64,000 nucleotides of DNA from Tetramitus jugosus (Eukaryota; Protista; Heterolobosea), in the NCBI GenBank assembly GCA_937625935.1, contig OW569373.1, positions 310,001 through 374,000 on the forward strand. The letters are read 5' to 3'. A program made the translations under genes and the position numbers. Below the pieces are notes generated by a model. That model had not been told where the DNA came from and did not search any database. It saw only the letters and a list, made by a program, of their open reading frames with translations. Below, one piece after another: positions 27,212 to 31,229 of the stretch (position 1 is the stretch's first letter; each line of letters opens with the position of its first letter).

Positions 27212-28111
27212 CTAACCTTTGTGACATTCGATAGCTATATCAGTCAAGTGACCCATTCGGGAGGCTTCATACAATTTAAGAAAATGTGCTCCCCAACAAG
27301 GGGTGGAGTCAGAGACAGAAGGAAATCGTTTCCACTAGAGCCCGTTCTGTGGTTGAAATATGGAAGCAAAACTAGGTGCAATAAGGACATGAGAGTTGAG
27401 CATTGTCCAGTGCAAGGTCAAGCAATCCAGGATACAAAATAAAAGTTCTGTTGTCAGATCCCTTCAAGACAAATATCTTAACCGCGAATAACAACTCTTT
27501 GACAAGGGGAATCTGCCGAAAGGGAGGGTGATTGCCCAGTGGTTGTAACTTTCTGCCCACCATTCCTTTTCCTGCTCAAGTCGAAAGTCGAAAATTCCTA
27601 CCACCATATCAACAACTTTTCCGCAACTTAAGTGAACCATAGTAGCATTAGATCGAGCATCCGGGTGAGAAACCGAATGAAATTTGATCCATGTTTTGGA
27701 AGTATGTCGTATCGATGCAGATCATTCGTTGGTTTACCAGGGAAACCACCAAACGTAAACAAACATGTTGTCCTCCGCAATAAGCATCATCAGTACTCAA
27801 TGGTTCGGTTGCCGCACAATACTCTAGACTCGGATAATCTCCTCCTTGTTGAGAATCTTGTGGAACGGTTGAGTCAACTCCTTTCTCAAAGGATCACACA
27901 CCCTTAGAGCCTGTTCTGGAGTGAAAAAGGAAATATCAGATCCTCCATACCAATACGCTTTTCCTCCACCAGATACGATTGTGTGATTGAATCTGAGGTT
28001 TTAAAACATAAGAATACATCTGTATACTATCATCCATAGCTCATCTCATGACTTGCGCAACATCATTGCTCCATCACTCCTTCCACTCCATACTCTCCAC
28101 ATCCAACTCAT
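27212..28111 (-). pseudogene. Kelch-repeat pseudogene with several frameshifts and stops
   Basis: Minus-strand fragments in shifting frames: RFNHTIVSGGGKAYWYGG, LFTFGGFPGKPTNDLHRYD, SKTWIKF..PDARSNATMV, YGGRN, KVTTTG; ends HFLKLYEASRMGHLTDIAIECHKG*. Confidence 0.72.
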
Positions 28112-28126
28112 TGACGAATTTTTGGG

Positions 28127-28138
28127 TTTGGCGCCAAA
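28127..28138. promoter_or_regulatory. Palindromic E2F-like element TTTGGCGCCAAA in a divergent promoter
   Basis: Perfect 12-bp palindrome matching TTTSSCGC on both strands, between the Kelch pseudogene and the F-box-Rab gene. Confidence 0.4.
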
Positions 28139-28246
28139 ATGGCCTCTACTTAAAATGTTTGTAAGAAAAAAGTAATTCGAGTTGGAACGAATTCTTGAGT
28201 TCCTTCCCCTCACAAAACCAGCCAAACAAAAAAACCATAATCGAAC

Positions 28247-29275
28247 ATGACTGTCGCAGCACTGAGCTGGGATGAGCTCTCCCAGGTTCTGCTCTTTCTC
28301 CCAGCGTCCGACGTGTGTCACTATTCGCAGACCAATTCCACTGCATATGACTGTATCCTATCCAACCAAGACTTGTGGTCAGTGCTCCTGCAGAGAGACT
28401 TTGCTTCCATAATTGAACAATTGAAGCAACCACAAACAGCAGCTATGCAGAGTATCGCTGCAGCCAGCAACATGGTGGTGGATCAAGCCTGTTGTGACGA
28501 AATGAAGAATTACGTGTGCTACTACGTGCGATTTTACCAATTTCCGTTCGATCGAGTCGAAGCCAGGTCCATGTACGATGAAATGAGCAATCACACGATT
28601 TCCAAGGTTTTATTCGGTGTGGCATCCAGTCCATTGAATCTGTTGGTGATGAACACTTTGAAAAACGGACAACTCGATAAACCACAGAATGGAAACTATC
28701 CCGTGATCGGTATCGATTTCATGCTGGCGTGTATGGCTTCGAGACAGCCAAAGGTGACTCCAAACTTTACAATTCAACTTTGGCAGATTGGTCCAACACC
28801 AGAGAGATTTCGAACTATTTCAAGGGCCTACTATCGTGGTGCTCAATGCATGGTGATCACAGTAGACACTCAACATGCATGGGAAGAAGATTATTCTACC
28901 GATCATCCATACAGTTCTTACGGTCCGAATTCTTTGTCGAGAGCTCTGGCAGCACTTAAAGAGAGTCAACCAGCTTTACATCTTGTGCCACCAAGGCCTT
29001 GCAAAGGTGTGTTGATTGTTGGTGTCGGTGTTTGGTCAGAAGAAGCACCCATTTCAAAACAGAGATTCCTCAATGATTGTGCTCGAGTGTTTGATATTTT
29101 GCCTTTGGAGTACTTTGAGTTGACCGGCGATAATGCCCCAGTAATGTCAGATATTATAATGAGACGTTTTTATGCATTCCATCAACAGGCTGCTCTGGAA
29201 GATCCAGAAATGGTTTCCACTCAACCGAGAGCACAACAAGAAGCGCCTCCACAATCGAGATGCATCTTAAGCTGA
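28247..29275 (+). CDS. F-box fused to a degenerate Rab-like domain with C-terminal CAAX (CILS)
   Basis: F-box LSWDELSQVLLFLPASDV..DLWSVLLQRDF; Rab motifs IGIDF, IQLW, ERFRTISRAYYRGA; no GxxxxGK, DxxG or NKxD. Confidence 0.85.
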   Translation: MTVAALSWDELSQVLLFLPASDVCHYSQTNSTAYDCILSNQDLWSVLLQRDFASIIEQLKQPQTAAMQSIAAASNMVVDQACCDEMKNYVCYYVRFYQFPFDRVEARSMYDEMSNHTISKVLFGVASSPLNLLVMNTLKNGQLDKPQNGNYPVIGIDFMLACMASRQPKVTPNFTIQLWQIGPTPERFRTISRAYYRGAQCMVITVDTQHAWEEDYSTDHPYSSYGPNSLSRALAALKESQPALHLVPPRPCKGVLIVGVGVWSEEAPISKQRFLNDCARVFDILPLEYFELTGDNAPVMSDIIMRRFYAFHQQAALEDPEMVSTQPRAQQEAPPQSRCILS

Positions 29276-29336
29276 GCAATAAGCGAATTTGTAACACAAC
29301 GTAAAATCTGGAACAAAAAGTATCTCAAAATGCGAT

Positions 29337-29409
29337 CTCCTCCAGTTGGGCTCGAACCAACGACCTGCAGGTTAACAGCCTGACGCTCTACCAACTGAGC
29401 CATGGAGGA
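29337..29409 (-). tRNA. trnN-GTT: tRNA-Asn (GTT)
   Basis: TCCTCCA TG GCTCAGTTGGTAGAGC G TCAGGCT-GTT-AACCTGC AGGTC GTTGGTTCGAGCCCAAC TGGAGGA G: 73-nt cloverleaf, A and B boxes, downstream T-tracts. Confidence 0.96.
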
Positions 29410-29704
29410 ATTATGTTAATTCTCCGAATTAGCAGACGTCAGTCGAACTGCGAGAAAAGCAGGAAAAACGGGATAACATGTCTGGTGATTGGAATACGGC
29501 AACAGCCGTTATGCAGTGTGGACCACTGCACGGAAGGGCTCACCAAGTGTGAGAGAGTCCGTCATTACTGGCAATGGTGTCTCTCAGTCAGCTTTGCAGC
29601 GCTGGCCGATGAATTCAAACGGAAATAAACGGAGGTTTATTATGAGAGTTTTGAATAGAGTGGCAAGAGATTCTCAGTTGTATTCGGGTTCAGATAAATG
29701 CTGT

Positions 29705-31229
29705 TCATTTGATAATGTATTTTTCGATGACAGGAAGGTAGGATACCAAAGAAGACGCCATTACTGCTTGTTTGTAGGATACATGAGGATCGACTAGGAT
29801 ATCAGCGCTTCGACCATTCTTAGTTGGAGGCTTTCCTCCCATCGTCCTCAAAACGTTGGAGATTGGATTTTTCAGCCTGTCTTGAGCGAGAATAACCTTT
29901 CCTAAGAACTCACTTCCCGATGTCAGAAGAGGCCCTGCACCATATCTCGGTTGACCCGTGCCCAGGAAGTAAATGTTTCGATATTCGGGAACAAACATGC
30001 CAAATATCAATTGCGGGACATTGTCAATGGTCTCCACATACGATTTCAATAATGGTATACTATTGTAGTAACCAGTACAACAAACAATCATATCTACTTC
30101 AATAGAAGTACCATCTACAAAATTGACAGTTTTTCCACCAGGAAAGCTCTCAATGTCAGAGTGTGGTGCTATGCTGCCCAATCGAATATAATGCAACAAT
30201 TCAGAGTTGATGGTTGGATGGTGCTCAAACAATCTATGATCTGGTTTTTGTAATCCATATTTTTCATAGCGACCAAACACGACAAATGTTAGGAACTCCA
30301 AAAGAAGCTTCTGCAACCAGAGAGGTATATATGGACGAATCAACTCAACTGTTGGCACTCCCAGAATGGATCTAGGAATGAACCAATAACCTCTCCTGAG
30401 AGAAATATGAGTCTCCTGTGAGAATCGAGCACTCTCAACAGATATATCACATGTAGAGTTACCACCACCAATCACCAACACTCGCTTTCCTACCAATTGC
30501 TCAGGTTTCTTGTAATCTTTGGAATGGATCAACTCACCAGTAAATAATTCTTGTCCCGTGTACTTTGGCATTCTGCGATCCCAATGATGGCCGTTAGCAA
30601 TGACAACCCTTGTAGACAAGTGTTCTTTCCGTGCCTGTTGCCAAGTCCCTGATAGTCACCTTCCATGTCTTTCCATCATCTTGAGCCACCAAATTCGTTA
30701 CTTCACTCTGAAAAGAAATGTGTTGTCTCAAACGAAAGAAATCACAATAGTCATTCATGTACTTGACCATTTGTTTCGCACTGGGAAAGTCAGGATAGCT
30801 CTCAGGCATTGGCCAATCCTTGTACTCTGTTGTTTTCTTGCTGCTAATAATGTGTACCGTATCGTACACACCATTGTACCAATTTCCACCAATCTGAGCA
30901 TTTCGTTCGACAGCATCAAACGCAATGTGATGACGTTTCAATGAACCACAGACTGCCAAGCCAGAAAATCCAGCACCAATCACCAAAAACTTGTCCTTTG
31001 TGTCCAGAGCTTCATCTTTGGAAGCTTGATTCTTGTCGGCGGGCTCCTCTGTCCTCTCCTTTGCTTTAGCTTCTAGGTCTTCTTCTTGTTGCTTTTTCTT
31101 CACCAGATAGTGCTTGTAGCGATGATGAGACTGTATGGGATCACTCCAGTAGAACAGTACATCTGACCAATAGATAAAATAGAGAGCCAGTGCCAGAACA
31201 CCAACAGAAACAACCACCGCCAAAAACAT
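29705..31229 (-). pseudogene. Flavin-containing monooxygenase (FMO) with N-terminal anchor, split by one frameshift near 30610 (pseudogene or assembly error)
   Basis: GAGFSG, GGNWY, YPDFP in 30594-31229; VVIANGHHW, FTGELIHSKDYK, GGGNS, CTGY in 29705-30619. The YKG-VVIANGH junction is out of frame. Confidence 0.8.

What the first reader, a model, noticed from the sequence alone, without database searches (positions are those of the whole stretch)
28247..29275. F-box fused to a prenylatable Rab pseudo-GTPase: candidate integrated-decoy SCF adaptor
Seen: an N-terminal F-box, then a Rab-like domain that keeps the interaction surface (switch I IGIDF, interswitch W, switch II ERFRTISRAYYRGA, as in Rab1/Rab8) while the nucleotide-binding motifs are lost (P-loop region reads KVLFGVASSPL, DTAG reads QIGP, no NKxD), ending in CAAX CILS. 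Established: F-boxes bind Skp1-Cul1; Rab switch regions bind effectors, GEFs and GAPs and are targeted by effectors of intra-amoebal bacteria (e.g. Legionella DrrA/SidM modifies Rab1 switch II). Inference: a membrane-tethered Rab mimic that baits Rab-binding proteins, host or pathogen, into SCF ubiquitylation.
Basis: partly seen in the sequence, partly recalled or inferred. Interest (0 to 1): 0.85.

Follow-up and report, generated by a model that had tools for sequence, protein, structure and literature searches.

The report
F-box, dead Rab-like domain, lipid anchor
This is a real, expressed gene for a membrane-anchorable F-box protein built on a Rab-type GTPase fold that has lost every nucleotide-binding motif. 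It is one of at least 22 copies in this protist genome, the architecture has been reported in Naegleria, and the "pathogen decoy" idea has no specific support.

Summary
Window 28247-29275 (+) is an intact, intronless 342-aa ORF. It has an N-terminal F-box, a conserved linker block, a Rab-fold domain and a C-terminal CaaX (CILS). The Rab-fold domain keeps the Rab family motifs (IGIDF, QLW, RFRTIS, YYRGA) but has no P-loop, DxxG or NKxD.

The gene is functional:
- Soil metatranscriptome contigs cover the coding region and not its flanks.
- dN/dS against a 97%-identical relative is 0.32.

It is not a singleton. The 26-Mb genome holds 22 full-length paralogues plus about six decayed copies. First-stage notes s1-541666 and s1-553484 flagged the same family on other pieces of this genome.

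A model of the F-box with the genome's own Skp1 passes its test (ipSAE 0.84, best control 0.02). Cullins and prenyltransferase subunits are present.

Among paralogues the switch regions are the least conserved structured part of the G domain. The most conserved parts are the F-box, strands beta4 to beta6 with helix alpha4, and the CaaX. This copy is a slow-evolving member that keeps the ancestral switch II.

Herman et al. 2021 (PMC8296547, supplement) already describe expanded F-box + Rab-like + CaaX genes in Naegleria.

Best reading: a farnesyl-anchored Skp1/SCF adaptor with a nucleotide-independent Rab-derived recognition domain. The decoy function remains untested speculation.

The parts
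28220..28246 (+). short 5' leader
   Evidence: Two independently assembled environmental contigs (L026, L027) and the metatranscriptome contig of X2 all begin at window 28220, 27 nt before the ATG. No RNA-run depth lies upstream of 28185.
28247..29275 (+). complete intronless CDS, 342 aa plus TGA stop
   Evidence: the ORF listing. Collinear with 21 paralogues without gaps that would suggest introns. dN/dS 0.32 against the 97% identical relative L026. RNA contigs cover it.
28259..28402 (+). F-box (res 5-52): LSWDEL..VLLFLP..DV....QTNS..YD.I.SN..LW..LL.RDF
   Evidence: Pfam F-box E 0.048 and F-box-like E 0.073 in this copy; homologues pass the gathering score. Family profile hits cyclin F, FBXL3, KDM2A/B, beta-TrCP, FBXO4, FBXL2 and FBXL5 on their F-boxes. 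AF2 gives three short helices plus a long one. Skp1 complex model ipSAE 0.84 against best control 0.02, with contacts at residues 1-34 and 50. Second-tier conservation among paralogues (SP 3.21).
28403..28489 (+). variable linker (res 53-81)
   Evidence: Least conserved stretch (SP -0.05). pLDDT below 50 at residues 63-74.
28490..28558 (+). conserved family-specific block (res 82-104: CCDEM..Y.C.Y.RF..FPF.RV), helix plus short strand preceding the G domain
   Evidence: SP 3.40 among paralogues. C83, Y89 and P100 are at least 90% conserved in A3. Helix 84-97 and strand 101-104 in the model. Its function is unknown.
28589..29197 (+). Rab-derived pseudo-GTPase domain (res 115-317), full b1-a1-b2-b3-a2-b4-a3-b5-a4-b6-a5 topology
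   Evidence: AF2 secondary-structure order. Foldseek top 50 are nearly all Rabs. phmmer against PDB returns Rabs only. Pfam Roc E 7e-4 and Ras E 0.18.
28604..28636 (+). degenerate G1/P-loop site (res 120-130, KVLFGVASSPL): no GxxxxGK[ST]
   Evidence: Regex over 32 family members: 0 of 32 have a P-loop.
28703..28720 (+). switch I / RabF1 (res 153-158, VIGIDF)
   Evidence: Aligns to the IGIDF/IGVDF of Sec4 and Rab30. Variable among paralogues.
28775..28801 (+). beta3 end with invariant-type Trp (W179) and G3 remnant (QLWQIGPTP in place of the canonical Rab Q[IV]WDTAGQ, as in the Sec4 and Rab30 alignments)
   Evidence: W179 is at least 90% conserved in A3. No DxxG in any member.
28802..28843 (+). 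switch II with RabF3/RabF4 (res 186-199, ERFRTISRAYYRGA)
   Evidence: Near-identical to Sec4, Rab1 and Rab8 switch II. Most conserved region against distant homologues (SP 3.04) but among the least conserved across paralogues (SP 1.16).
29015..29038 (+). former G4 site rebuilt as family motif IVGVGVWS (res 257-264), replacing NKxD
   Evidence: Highest conservation block of the family (b5+G4 SP 4.35). Motif table.
29111..29134 (+). former G5 site rebuilt as YFELTGDN (res 289-296), replacing ETSAK
   Evidence: SP 3.88. Motif table.
29198..29260 (+). variable, predicted disordered C-terminal tail (res 318-338); no polybasic run and no upstream Cys
   Evidence: pLDDT below 50 at residues 323-342. 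SP 0.79.
29261..29272 (+). CaaX box CILS (res 339-342)
   Evidence: 18 of 22 paralogues end in C-[IV]-[LMIV]-[ST], 13 of them in CILS. Distant homologues end in CIIC, CIIN, CILQ, CIIS or CVVS. C339 and S342 are invariant in A1. Prenyltransferase alpha-subunit repeats lie at 3 loci in the genome.

Best explanation
The gene encodes one member of a lineage-specific family of at least 22 copies. The proteins have three parts: an N-terminal F-box, a Rab-derived small-GTPase fold that can no longer bind nucleotide (a pseudo-GTPase), and a C-terminal CaaX box.

The most likely mechanism has four steps:
1. The CaaX cysteine is farnesylated (X = Ser). With no second membrane signal, this tethers the protein to endomembranes.
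2. The F-box docks on Skp1, and through it probably on a cullin-RING ligase.
3. The nucleotide-independent Rab-like domain acts as a constitutive protein-recognition module.
4. Partner specificity differs between paralogues, because the switch I/II face is what varies, while the F-box, the beta4-alpha5 half of the fold and the anchor are held constant.

The window copy is a slow-evolving member whose switch face still looks like Rab1/Rab8/Sec4, so its ligands may be proteins that recognise that face.

Shown here: an intact, expressed and constrained gene; the Rab fold; loss of all G motifs; a conserved CaaX; F-box likeness; a passing Skp1 interface model; and the ligase and prenylation machinery in the genome.

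Inferred: farnesylation, membrane location, SCF assembly, which face binds targets, and ubiquitylation of those targets.
For: Gene status:
- ORF and motifs.
- Expression: contigs of three soil metatranscriptome runs cover 28220/28235/28242 to 29227/29417. They give zero depth on the flanks 27900-28184 and beyond 29440. A run that matches the window exactly where its contigs lie uniquely (X19, library type not on record, taken to be DNA of the source organism) covers everything.
- Constraint: dN/dS 0.32 overall and 0.05 in the conserved core against L026.

Fold and motifs:
- Rab fold.
- No P-loop, DxxG or NKxD in 0 of 32 members.

F-box and machinery:
- F-box.
- Skp1 (L028, 168 aa) with residues 1-62: ipSAE 0.84, best of 3 controls 0.02. 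That mark was reached by 51 of 78 solved complexes and 2 of 108 mismatched pairs. The three runs agree in at least 96% of contacts and the partner pLDDT is at least 79. The interface uses the C-terminal helices of Skp1.
- At least 8 cullin genes and prenyltransferase alpha repeats at 3 loci.

Family:
- 22 full-length paralogues plus decayed copies. All form one clade (98/96 support).
- Conservation pattern.
- CaaX conserved in 18 of 22 copies and in distant homologues.

Precedents:
- Prenylated F-box ligase acting at membranes: FBXL2 (PMC9988375).
- Atypical GTPase domains as cullin adaptors: RhoBTB3 (PMC3812982).
- F-box + GTPase fusions in Naegleria, interpreted as 'GTPase-dependent ubiquitination' (PMC8296547 supplement).
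Against: - No experiment shows Skp1 binding, prenylation or any substrate.
- The complex model can pass 'from memory' because Skp1/F-box complexes are solved. It shows likeness, not binding.
- The F-box of this copy is below the Pfam threshold and lacks the usual Leu-Pro start (it reads LSWDEL).
- The higher variability of the switch face could be relaxed constraint after loss of nucleotide binding, rather than diversified specificity. Its replacement rate between near-identical counterparts (0.075 per site) lies between the core (0.039) and the loops and linker (0.094-0.106).
- The strongly conserved beta4-alpha5 half may be the real common binding surface.
Confidence: 0.55

Rival explanations
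1. First reader's reading. The protein is a membrane-tethered Rab mimic, an 'integrated decoy'. It baits Rab-binding proteins, especially effectors of intracellular bacteria that modify Rab1 switch II, into SCF-dependent ubiquitylation.
For: - This copy keeps the Rab1/Rab8/Sec4-type switch I, interswitch Trp and switch II, including the Tyr that aligns with the AMPylated Tyr77 of Rab1b (alignment; PDB 3nkv title).
- The family is expanded, shows birth-and-death (decayed copies) and varies most on the switch face. An arms race could produce this pattern.
- Herman et al. also guessed a role 'at the organism-environment interface'.
Against: - No data link the gene to infection.
- Most paralogues have drifted away from any real Rab switch sequence, which is the opposite of mimicry.
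- Switch regions are not preferentially conserved between near-identical counterparts.
- The Ser that aligns with the phosphocholination site preceding the Tyr pair is Ala here (alignment; the site assignment is from my own knowledge).
- Without nucleotide the switch conformation may not resemble either Rab state.
- A Ras-type farnesyl CaaX would not necessarily place it on the membranes where Rab1 acts.
Confidence: 0.08
2. The F-box works outside a ubiquitin ligase, or on the protein itself. One option is a Skp1/F-box complex with a direct membrane-traffic role. From my own knowledge, yeast Rcy1 is an F-box plus CaaX protein and a Rab effector that acts in a non-SCF Skp1 complex. The other option is that the F-box only sets the protein's own rapid turnover, as the authors proposed for the trypanosome FYVE/F-box/GTPase protein TbFRP.
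For: The TbFRP authors link its F-box to rapid proteolysis of the protein itself (PMC3593210). The Skp1 model says nothing about cullin recruitment. The most conserved surface, beta4-alpha5, is common to all paralogues, as expected for a shared non-substrate partner.
Against: At least 22 paralogues with a diversified face are easier to explain by many targets than by one trafficking step. The genome has many cullins and several other F-box/GTPase fusion families, which points to a ligase theme.
Confidence: 0.2
3. The domain is still a nucleotide-regulated switch that binds GTP, ATP or another ligand in a non-canonical way, as RhoBTB3 binds ATP. On this reading the rebuilt G4/G5 motifs form a new pocket.
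For: The former G4 and G5 positions are the most conserved motifs of the family (IVGVGVWS, YFELTCDN). That would be odd for a pocket that is simply dead. RhoBTB3 is described as a Rho-related ATPase (PMC3812982).
Against: The P-loop Lys and Ser/Thr, the DxxG Asp and Gly context and the catalytic Gln are all absent in every one of 32 members. No known small G domain binds nucleotide without a P-loop.
Confidence: 0.05
4. The gene is a decaying, functionless relic of a Rab gene.
For: All G motifs are lost. The family contains several frameshifted or stop-ridden copies.
Against: The ORF is intact and RNA contigs cover it. dN/dS is 0.32 overall and 0.05 in the core. The F-box, the beta4-alpha5 half and the CaaX are strongly conserved across 22 paralogues and across distant homologues. 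The fold is predicted with confidence.
Confidence: 0.03

Closest known systems
Naegleria divergent Rab-like genes with N-terminal F-box, one subgroup with CaaX (Herman et al. 2021, BMC Biol 19:142, PMC8296547, Additional file 4 and Table S8)
   Same: Same three-part architecture: F-box, Rab-like domain, CaaX. Same lineage-specific expansion with disrupted copies ('birth-and-death'). The same genome-wide habit of fusing F-boxes to Rab, Rho and G-alpha domains. An F-box + Rho-like + CaaX family is present here, and first-stage notes report F-box in G-alpha.
   Different: Orthology to the Naegleria genes was not shown. Exhaustive searches returned only environmental sequences and no NCBI Naegleria protein. 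The supplement text I searched does not mention loss of nucleotide-binding motifs. At least one N. gruberi F-box Rab-like sequence printed in Table S8 still has a GxxxxGKT P-loop, whereas 0 of 32 members here do. The window GC of 41.8% and the genome size of 26.35 Mb suggest, from my own knowledge of Naegleria genomes, a different organism.
TbFRP of Euglenozoa (FYVE + F-box + Ras-like GTPase; PMC3593210)
   Same: An F-box placed N-terminal to a small-GTPase domain, in a protein that carries its own membrane-targeting device. The function of the F-box is unknown and is thought to involve ubiquitin-dependent turnover.
   Different: Membrane targeting there is by a PI3P-binding FYVE domain, not a prenyl group. 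The paper calls the C-terminal domain a Ras-like GTPase rather than a dead fold. It is a single gene, not an expanded family. No sequence relationship was tested here; my candidate hits P0021, P0024 and P0025 turned out to be tandem multi-Ras proteins.
RhoBTB proteins (atypical Rho domain + BTB, Cul3 adaptors; RhoBTB3 in PMC3812982) and Rab40 (Rab + SOCS box, Cul5 adaptor; own knowledge)
   Same: A small-GTPase-fold domain built into the substrate-adaptor subunit of a cullin-RING ligase. The GTPase domain is atypical in RhoBTB. RhoBTB3 acts at the Golgi.
   Different: Different cullin-docking module (BTB or SOCS box instead of F-box) and different GTPase subfamily for RhoBTB. Rab40 is, to my knowledge, a working GTPase. 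No CaaX-only anchoring combined with complete loss of G motifs.
Prenylated F-box proteins: human FBXL2 (PMC9988375); yeast Rcy1 and Legionella AnkB (own knowledge)
   Same: F-box plus C-terminal CaaX, giving compartment-specific action on membranes. To my knowledge, Rcy1 works with Rab GTPases, and AnkB is a bacterial F-box/CaaX effector farnesylated by the host.
   Different: Their recognition modules are LRR, ankyrin or other repeats, not a Rab-derived fold.
Bona fide Rab GTPases of the Rab1/Rab8/Sec4 group
   Same: Fold, RabF1-F4 motifs and the hydrophobic Phe/Trp/Tyr triad of the effector face.
   Different: No G1, G3, G4 or G5 motifs. A Ras-type CaaX instead of CC/CXC. A 114-residue N-terminal extension carrying an F-box.

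Membership tests
F-box proteins (Skp1-binding SCF receptors) | Sequence matches the ~45-residue F-box profile | tested here: inconclusive
   This copy scores PF00646 14.1 bits (cut-off 20.5) and PF12937 13.3 bits (cut-off 24.3). Full-length homologues P0018 (22.2) and P0028 (21.5) pass PF00646. With the family profile, 12 of 14 PDB hits are F-box proteins aligned on their F-box, best E 0.012.
F-box proteins (Skp1-binding SCF receptors) | Binds Skp1 through the F-box | not testable with these tools
   Prediction only. ipSAE 0.84 against best control 0.02 with the genome's own Skp1, on a canonical interface. The tool warns that such a pass may reflect memory of solved complexes.
F-box proteins (Skp1-binding SCF receptors) | Skp1 and cullin partners exist in the organism | tested here: met
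   Skp1 at 104.6 bits in a 168-aa intronless ORF. At least 8 cullin-domain genes.
Rab GTPases | Small-GTPase fold | tested here: met
   AF2 pLDDT 81.7 with the canonical strand and helix order. Foldseek top 50 are nearly all Rabs, probability 1.00.
Rab GTPases | Rab family motifs RabF1-F5 (IGVDF, KLQIW, RFRSIT, YYRGA, LVYDIT; motif definitions from my own knowledge) | tested here: met
   IGIDF, IQLW, RFRTIS and YYRGA are present; F5 is only partial (MVITVDT).
Rab GTPases | G1-G5 nucleotide-binding motifs (GxxxxGK[ST], switch I Thr, DxxGQ, NKxD, SAK) | tested here: not met
   None present in this protein or in any of the 32 family members. It is therefore not a Rab GTPase but a Rab-derived pseudo-GTPase.
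Rab GTPases | C-terminal CC/CXC geranylgeranylation motif | tested here: not met
   Ends in CILS, a Ras-type CaaX with X = Ser.
Pseudo-GTPases (G-domain folds without nucleotide binding) | G fold retained while residues needed for nucleotide binding are absent | tested here: met
   Actual absence of binding needs biochemistry.
Heterolobosean F-box + Rab-like + CaaX expansion (Herman et al. 2021) | N-terminal F-box extension, divergent Rab-like domain and conserved CaaX | tested here: met
   description.
Heterolobosean F-box + Rab-like + CaaX expansion (Herman et al. 2021) | Lineage-specific expansion with disrupted copies | tested here: met
   22 full-length copies. Two copies are split by a frame change (C29, C36) and one is cut short by a stop (second copy of the C26 tandem pair). 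Three loci carry stop-ridden remnants (C30:53.6-54.2 kb, C21, C17). All own-genome copies form one clade.
Heterolobosean F-box + Rab-like + CaaX expansion (Herman et al. 2021) | Orthology with the Naegleria genes | tested here: inconclusive
   No Naegleria sequence was retrieved. Motif strings of the distant homologues were not found in Table S8, which lists most genes by accession only.
Integrated decoys (bait domain fused to a response module) | The bait mimics a host protein that pathogens target and is bound or modified by an effector | not testable with these tools
   Only the resemblance of this copy's switch face to Rab1/8 is shown. Family-wide the face diverges from Rabs.

The most novel reading that the evidence does not exclude
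The family of at least 22 genes is a diversifying, membrane-tethered ubiquitin-ligase surveillance system. Each paralogue presents a nucleotide-free Rab-like face as bait. The rapid turnover of that face and of whole gene copies reflects an arms race with Rab-targeting effectors of intracellular bacteria or giant viruses. This would be a protist analogue of integrated-decoy immunity.
Probability: 0.07. Interest if true: 0.85.

Novelty: new member of a known kind. Interest (0 to 1): 0.4.

Why it matters
Fusing a cullin-ligase docking motif to a small-GTPase fold is a rare way to couple membrane identity to ubiquitylation. RhoBTB, Rab40 and TbFRP are the few studied cases. This family offers a natural series of at least 22 variants with three constant features: a fully dead G domain, a farnesyl anchor and an F-box. 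What varies is the former effector face. That makes it a convenient system for asking what a nucleotide-free Rab fold can recognise.

The work here adds several things to the one-paragraph description in the Naegleria literature:
- the pseudo-GTPase status;
- the conservation map, with a variable switch lobe and rebuilt, conserved G4/G5 sites;
- a passing Skp1 interface model;
- evidence of expression in soil.

It also shows that the attractive decoy reading rests on one slow-evolving copy, not on the family.

Tried and rejected
1. A first AF2 run with 11 sequences gave pLDDT 61.7. I replaced it with a 32-sequence alignment.
2. I looked for TbFRP-like relatives among the long hits P0021, P0024 and P0025. 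They are tandem multi-Ras proteins, not FYVE/F-box proteins.
3. I tried to name the organism and the sources of the homologues. Only JGI sample numbers, one NCBI assembly accession (GCA_037189345.1) and coded run names came back. A Naegleria species already in NCBI is unlikely, because no NCBI Naegleria protein was hit.
4. I tried to tie the distant homologues P0026, P0028 and P0030 to the Naegleria Table S8 by short motif strings. There was no match.
5. A profile search with A3 in the 5.8-billion-protein set added nothing beyond the single-sequence searches.
6. Region-wise dN/dS on close pairs is underpowered, with 0-3 changes in the 30 switch codons. For the window copy, 0 of 30 switch residues differ from its near-identical counterpart P0038, against 13 of 312 elsewhere. 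That difference is not significant.
7. The intact F-box GTPases fetched from the genome (L030-L035, L038) are Rho/Rac-like, not Rab-like. They are a parallel family, not the progenitor of this one.
8. I rejected a pseudogene reading and an ORF-by-chance reading.
Full report
**What is there**

Window 28247-29275 (+) is a single open reading frame of 342 codons. An in-frame stop lies two codons upstream of the ATG.
- KVLFGVASSPL at residues 120-130, where a P-loop should be
- IGIDF at 154-158
- Trp179
- QIGP at 180-183, in place of DTAG
- ERFRTISRAYYRGA at 186-199
- no NKxD
- CILS at the C-terminus

A tRNA-Asn(GTT) gene lies on the minus strand 61 nt after the stop.

**Is the Rab likeness real?**

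Yes. phmmer against all PDB sequences returns only Rab proteins (Sec4, Rab30, Rab1, Rab8, Rab43, Rab35, Rab3, Rab7). E-values go down to 1e-4, always over residues ~150-210, which span switch I, beta2, beta3, switch II and beta4. Pfam sees the same stretch weakly (Roc E 7e-4, Ras E 0.18).

An AlphaFold2 model built on 32 family sequences has mean pLDDT 81.7 and pTM 0.71. It shows the full small-GTPase topology b1-a1-b2-b3-a2-b4-a3-b5-a4-b6-a5 at residues 116-317. Its 50 best Foldseek matches in the PDB are nearly all Rabs, with probability 1.00 and target TM-scores of 0.6-0.74.

The Rab family motifs RabF1 to F4 are recognisable. The nucleotide-binding motifs are not. None of the 32 family members has GxxxxGK[ST], DxxG or NKxD. 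The domain is therefore a Rab-derived pseudo-GTPase, not a Rab.

**Is the N-terminus an F-box?**

Very probably. This copy is below the Pfam thresholds (14.1 bits against 20.5), but several lines support it:
- Full-length homologues pass the threshold (P0018 at 22.2 bits, P0028 at 21.5 bits).
- A profile of 27 N-termini finds F-box proteins in 12 of its 14 PDB hits, each aligned on the F-box: cyclin F, FBXL3, KDM2A/B, beta-TrCP, FBXO4, FBXL2, FBXL5.
- The model shows the expected short helices.
- The genome encodes a canonical 168-aa Skp1. Folding it with residues 1-62 gave ipSAE 0.84 against 0.02 for the best of three controls. That mark was reached by 51 of 78 solved complexes and 2 of 108 mismatched pairs. 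The runs agree in at least 96% of contacts and the partner pLDDT is at least 79. Contacts lie on the C-terminal helices of Skp1.

The complex model supports likeness to known Skp1/F-box complexes. It does not prove binding. At least eight cullin genes and prenyltransferase alpha-subunit repeats at three loci are present.

**Is the gene alive?**

Yes.
- Two environmental contigs (L026, L027) are about 97% identical at the DNA level and encode a 96%-identical protein.
- dN/dS against L026 is 0.32 overall and 0.05 over the conserved core.
- Eight soil metatranscriptome runs hold the sequence. In the three I laid, contigs cover 28220/28235/28242 to 29227/29417. Depth is zero on the intergenic flank 27900-28184 and beyond 29440.
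- One further run (X19) matches the window exactly where its contigs lie uniquely and covers the whole stretch. Its library type is not on record; I take it to be DNA of the source organism.
- Three assemblies start at the same base, 28220, which suggests a 27-nt leader.

These are assembled contigs from a close relative, so strand and abundance are not shown.

**It is a family, not a one-off**

The 26.35-Mb genome contains 22 full-length paralogues at 35-68% identity, dispersed over many contigs, with two tandem pairs. Two further copies are split by a frame change (C29, C36) and one is cut short by a stop (second copy of the C26 pair). Three more loci carry stop-ridden remnants.

Eighteen of the 22 end in C-[IV]-[LMIV]-[ST], thirteen of them in CILS. 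All own-genome copies form one clade (98/96 support). Its sister is a group of environmental sequences (P0018, P0013, P0041), and P0026, P0028 and P0030 lie outside. The window copy has one of the shortest terminal branches, 0.16.

The distant members share the whole architecture. They have an F-box, a conserved RDF motif, a P-loop-less Rab-like domain with IGIDF and GPERFR..YYRGA, and a CaaX ending (CIIC, CIIN, CILQ, CIIS, CVVS).

First-stage notes s1-541666 and s1-553484 describe the same family on other pieces of this genome.

Three comparisons bear on this.

| Comparison | Switch I/II | Reference |
|---|---|---|
| Across the 22 paralogues (mean BLOSUM pair score) | 1.17 | 2.75, rest of G domain |
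| Query against six distant homologues (same score) | 2.23 | 1.15, rest of G domain |
| 14 paralogue / near-identical environmental counterpart pairs (replacements per site) | 0.075 | 0.039 G core; 0.046 F-box; 0.094-0.106 loops and linker |

Across the paralogues only 2% of random blocks score as low as the switch columns.

The best-conserved parts among paralogues, by the same score, are:

| Region | Score |
|---|---|
| beta5 with the rebuilt G4 site (IVGVGVWS) | 4.35 |
| beta4 | 3.97 |
| alpha4 | 3.94 |
| CaaX | 3.92 |
| beta6 with the rebuilt G5 site (YFELTCDN) | 3.88 |
| block at residues 82-104 | 3.40 |
| F-box | 3.21 |

Against distant homologues, switch II alone scores 3.04. So a Rab-like switch II is the ancestral state and survives in a few slow copies such as this one.

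In the third comparison seven pairs, including the window copy, show no change in the 30 switch residues, and others show 3-6.

The family as a whole therefore does not keep the Rab effector face. It keeps the scaffold and lets that face vary. For this copy alone the data are too few to decide: 0 of 30 switch residues differ, against 13 of 312 elsewhere.

**How it most likely works**

A scaffold made of the F-box, the beta4-alpha5 half and the anchor is held constant, while the former effector lobe varies among many paralogues. That is the layout of a family of substrate receptors.

The most likely mechanism is this. The CaaX is farnesylated, by the X = Ser rule of established prenylation biochemistry, as in H-Ras. 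The tail has no polybasic run and no extra Cys, so endomembranes are the default location. The F-box docks on Skp1 and probably on a cullin. The nucleotide-free Rab fold binds targets constitutively.

All steps after 'the motifs are there' are inference. Rivals are:
- a non-SCF Skp1 complex, or self-turnover as discussed for TbFRP;
- a non-canonical ligand pocket formed by the conserved ex-G4/G5 motifs;

**Comparison with what is known**

Herman et al. 2021 (PMC8296547, Additional file 4) report the following for Naegleria gruberi and N. fowleri:
- one subgroup with a conserved CaaX;
- disrupted copies indicating birth-and-death evolution;
- F-boxes also fused to Rho, Ran and G-alpha domains;
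- no functional prediction beyond a likely role 'at the organism-environment interface'.

This genome shows the same habits. I verified a second family of F-box + intact Rho/Rac-like GTPase + CaaX (CILC) at seven loci. First-stage notes report F-box in G-alpha.

The architecture is therefore already described. What that text does not state, as far as my searches of it show, is the complete loss of nucleotide-binding motifs and the conservation pattern found here. One N. gruberi F-box Rab-like sequence printed in Table S8 still has a P-loop.

Orthology between this family and the Naegleria CaaX subgroup could not be tested. Exhaustive protein searches returned only environmental sequences.

Other functional analogues:
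- TbFRP, with FYVE + F-box + GTPase
- RhoBTB3 with Cul3, and FBXL2 with its CaaX
- Rab40, Rcy1 and Legionella AnkB (from my own knowledge)

**Verdict**

The gene is a new member of a kind already noted in heteroloboseans, with added detail on its pseudo-GTPase nature. Interest is moderate.

Noticed in passing
window 29336-29410 (-): tRNA-Asn(GTT) lies 61 nt downstream of the stop codon on the opposite strand. It is conserved in the related environmental contig L026. One metatranscriptome contig (X2) runs from the F-box gene straight through it, so the 3' end of the mRNA may overlap the antisense tRNA gene.
   Followed up: partly
G000 loci L030:652-1722:+, L031:573-1679:+, L032:689-1693:-, L033:643-1692:-, L034:671-1663:+, L035:676-1659:-, L038:664-1620:-: A second family has an F-box (LPDDV.L.IL.FL; Pfam F-box or F-box-like above cut-off in L031 and L038). 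It also has an intact Rho/Rac-like GTPase (Ras family E about 1e-37; P-loop and NKxD present, DTAG altered in three copies) and a CaaX ending in Cys (CILC, CIVC, CVMC, CVIC).
   Followed up: partly
G000:C34:118146-118244 (-) (L029): A second Skp1-domain match (58 bits) lies inside an 877-aa open frame. It may be a Skp1 domain fused into a much larger protein.
   Followed up: no
G000:C30:53644-54166 (+) (L025), same contig as the window but outside it: A decayed copy of the F-box/pseudo-Rab family with several stop codons. Further remnants lie at C21:369946-370221 and C17:409224-409391. Frame-split copies lie at C29:424251-425215 and C36:68156-68946.
   Followed up: partly
window 29414-29491: One contig of run X19 joins 29414 to 29491, skipping 76 bases (ends GT..TT), just beyond the tRNA gene. 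It could be a deletion polymorphism or an assembly variant.
   Followed up: no
window 29705-30619 (-): The next gene downstream is a flavin-monooxygenase-like ORF that the ORF listing starts at a TTG. A first-stage note (s1-554813) reports a frameshift at its 5' end.
   Followed up: no
P0033 (environmental protein, 455 aa): A weak F-box-like N-terminus followed by a fully intact Rab-like GTPase (Ras family E 4e-42) and a long low-complexity tail without CaaX. It shows that F-box + working Rab fusions also exist elsewhere.
   Followed up: partly
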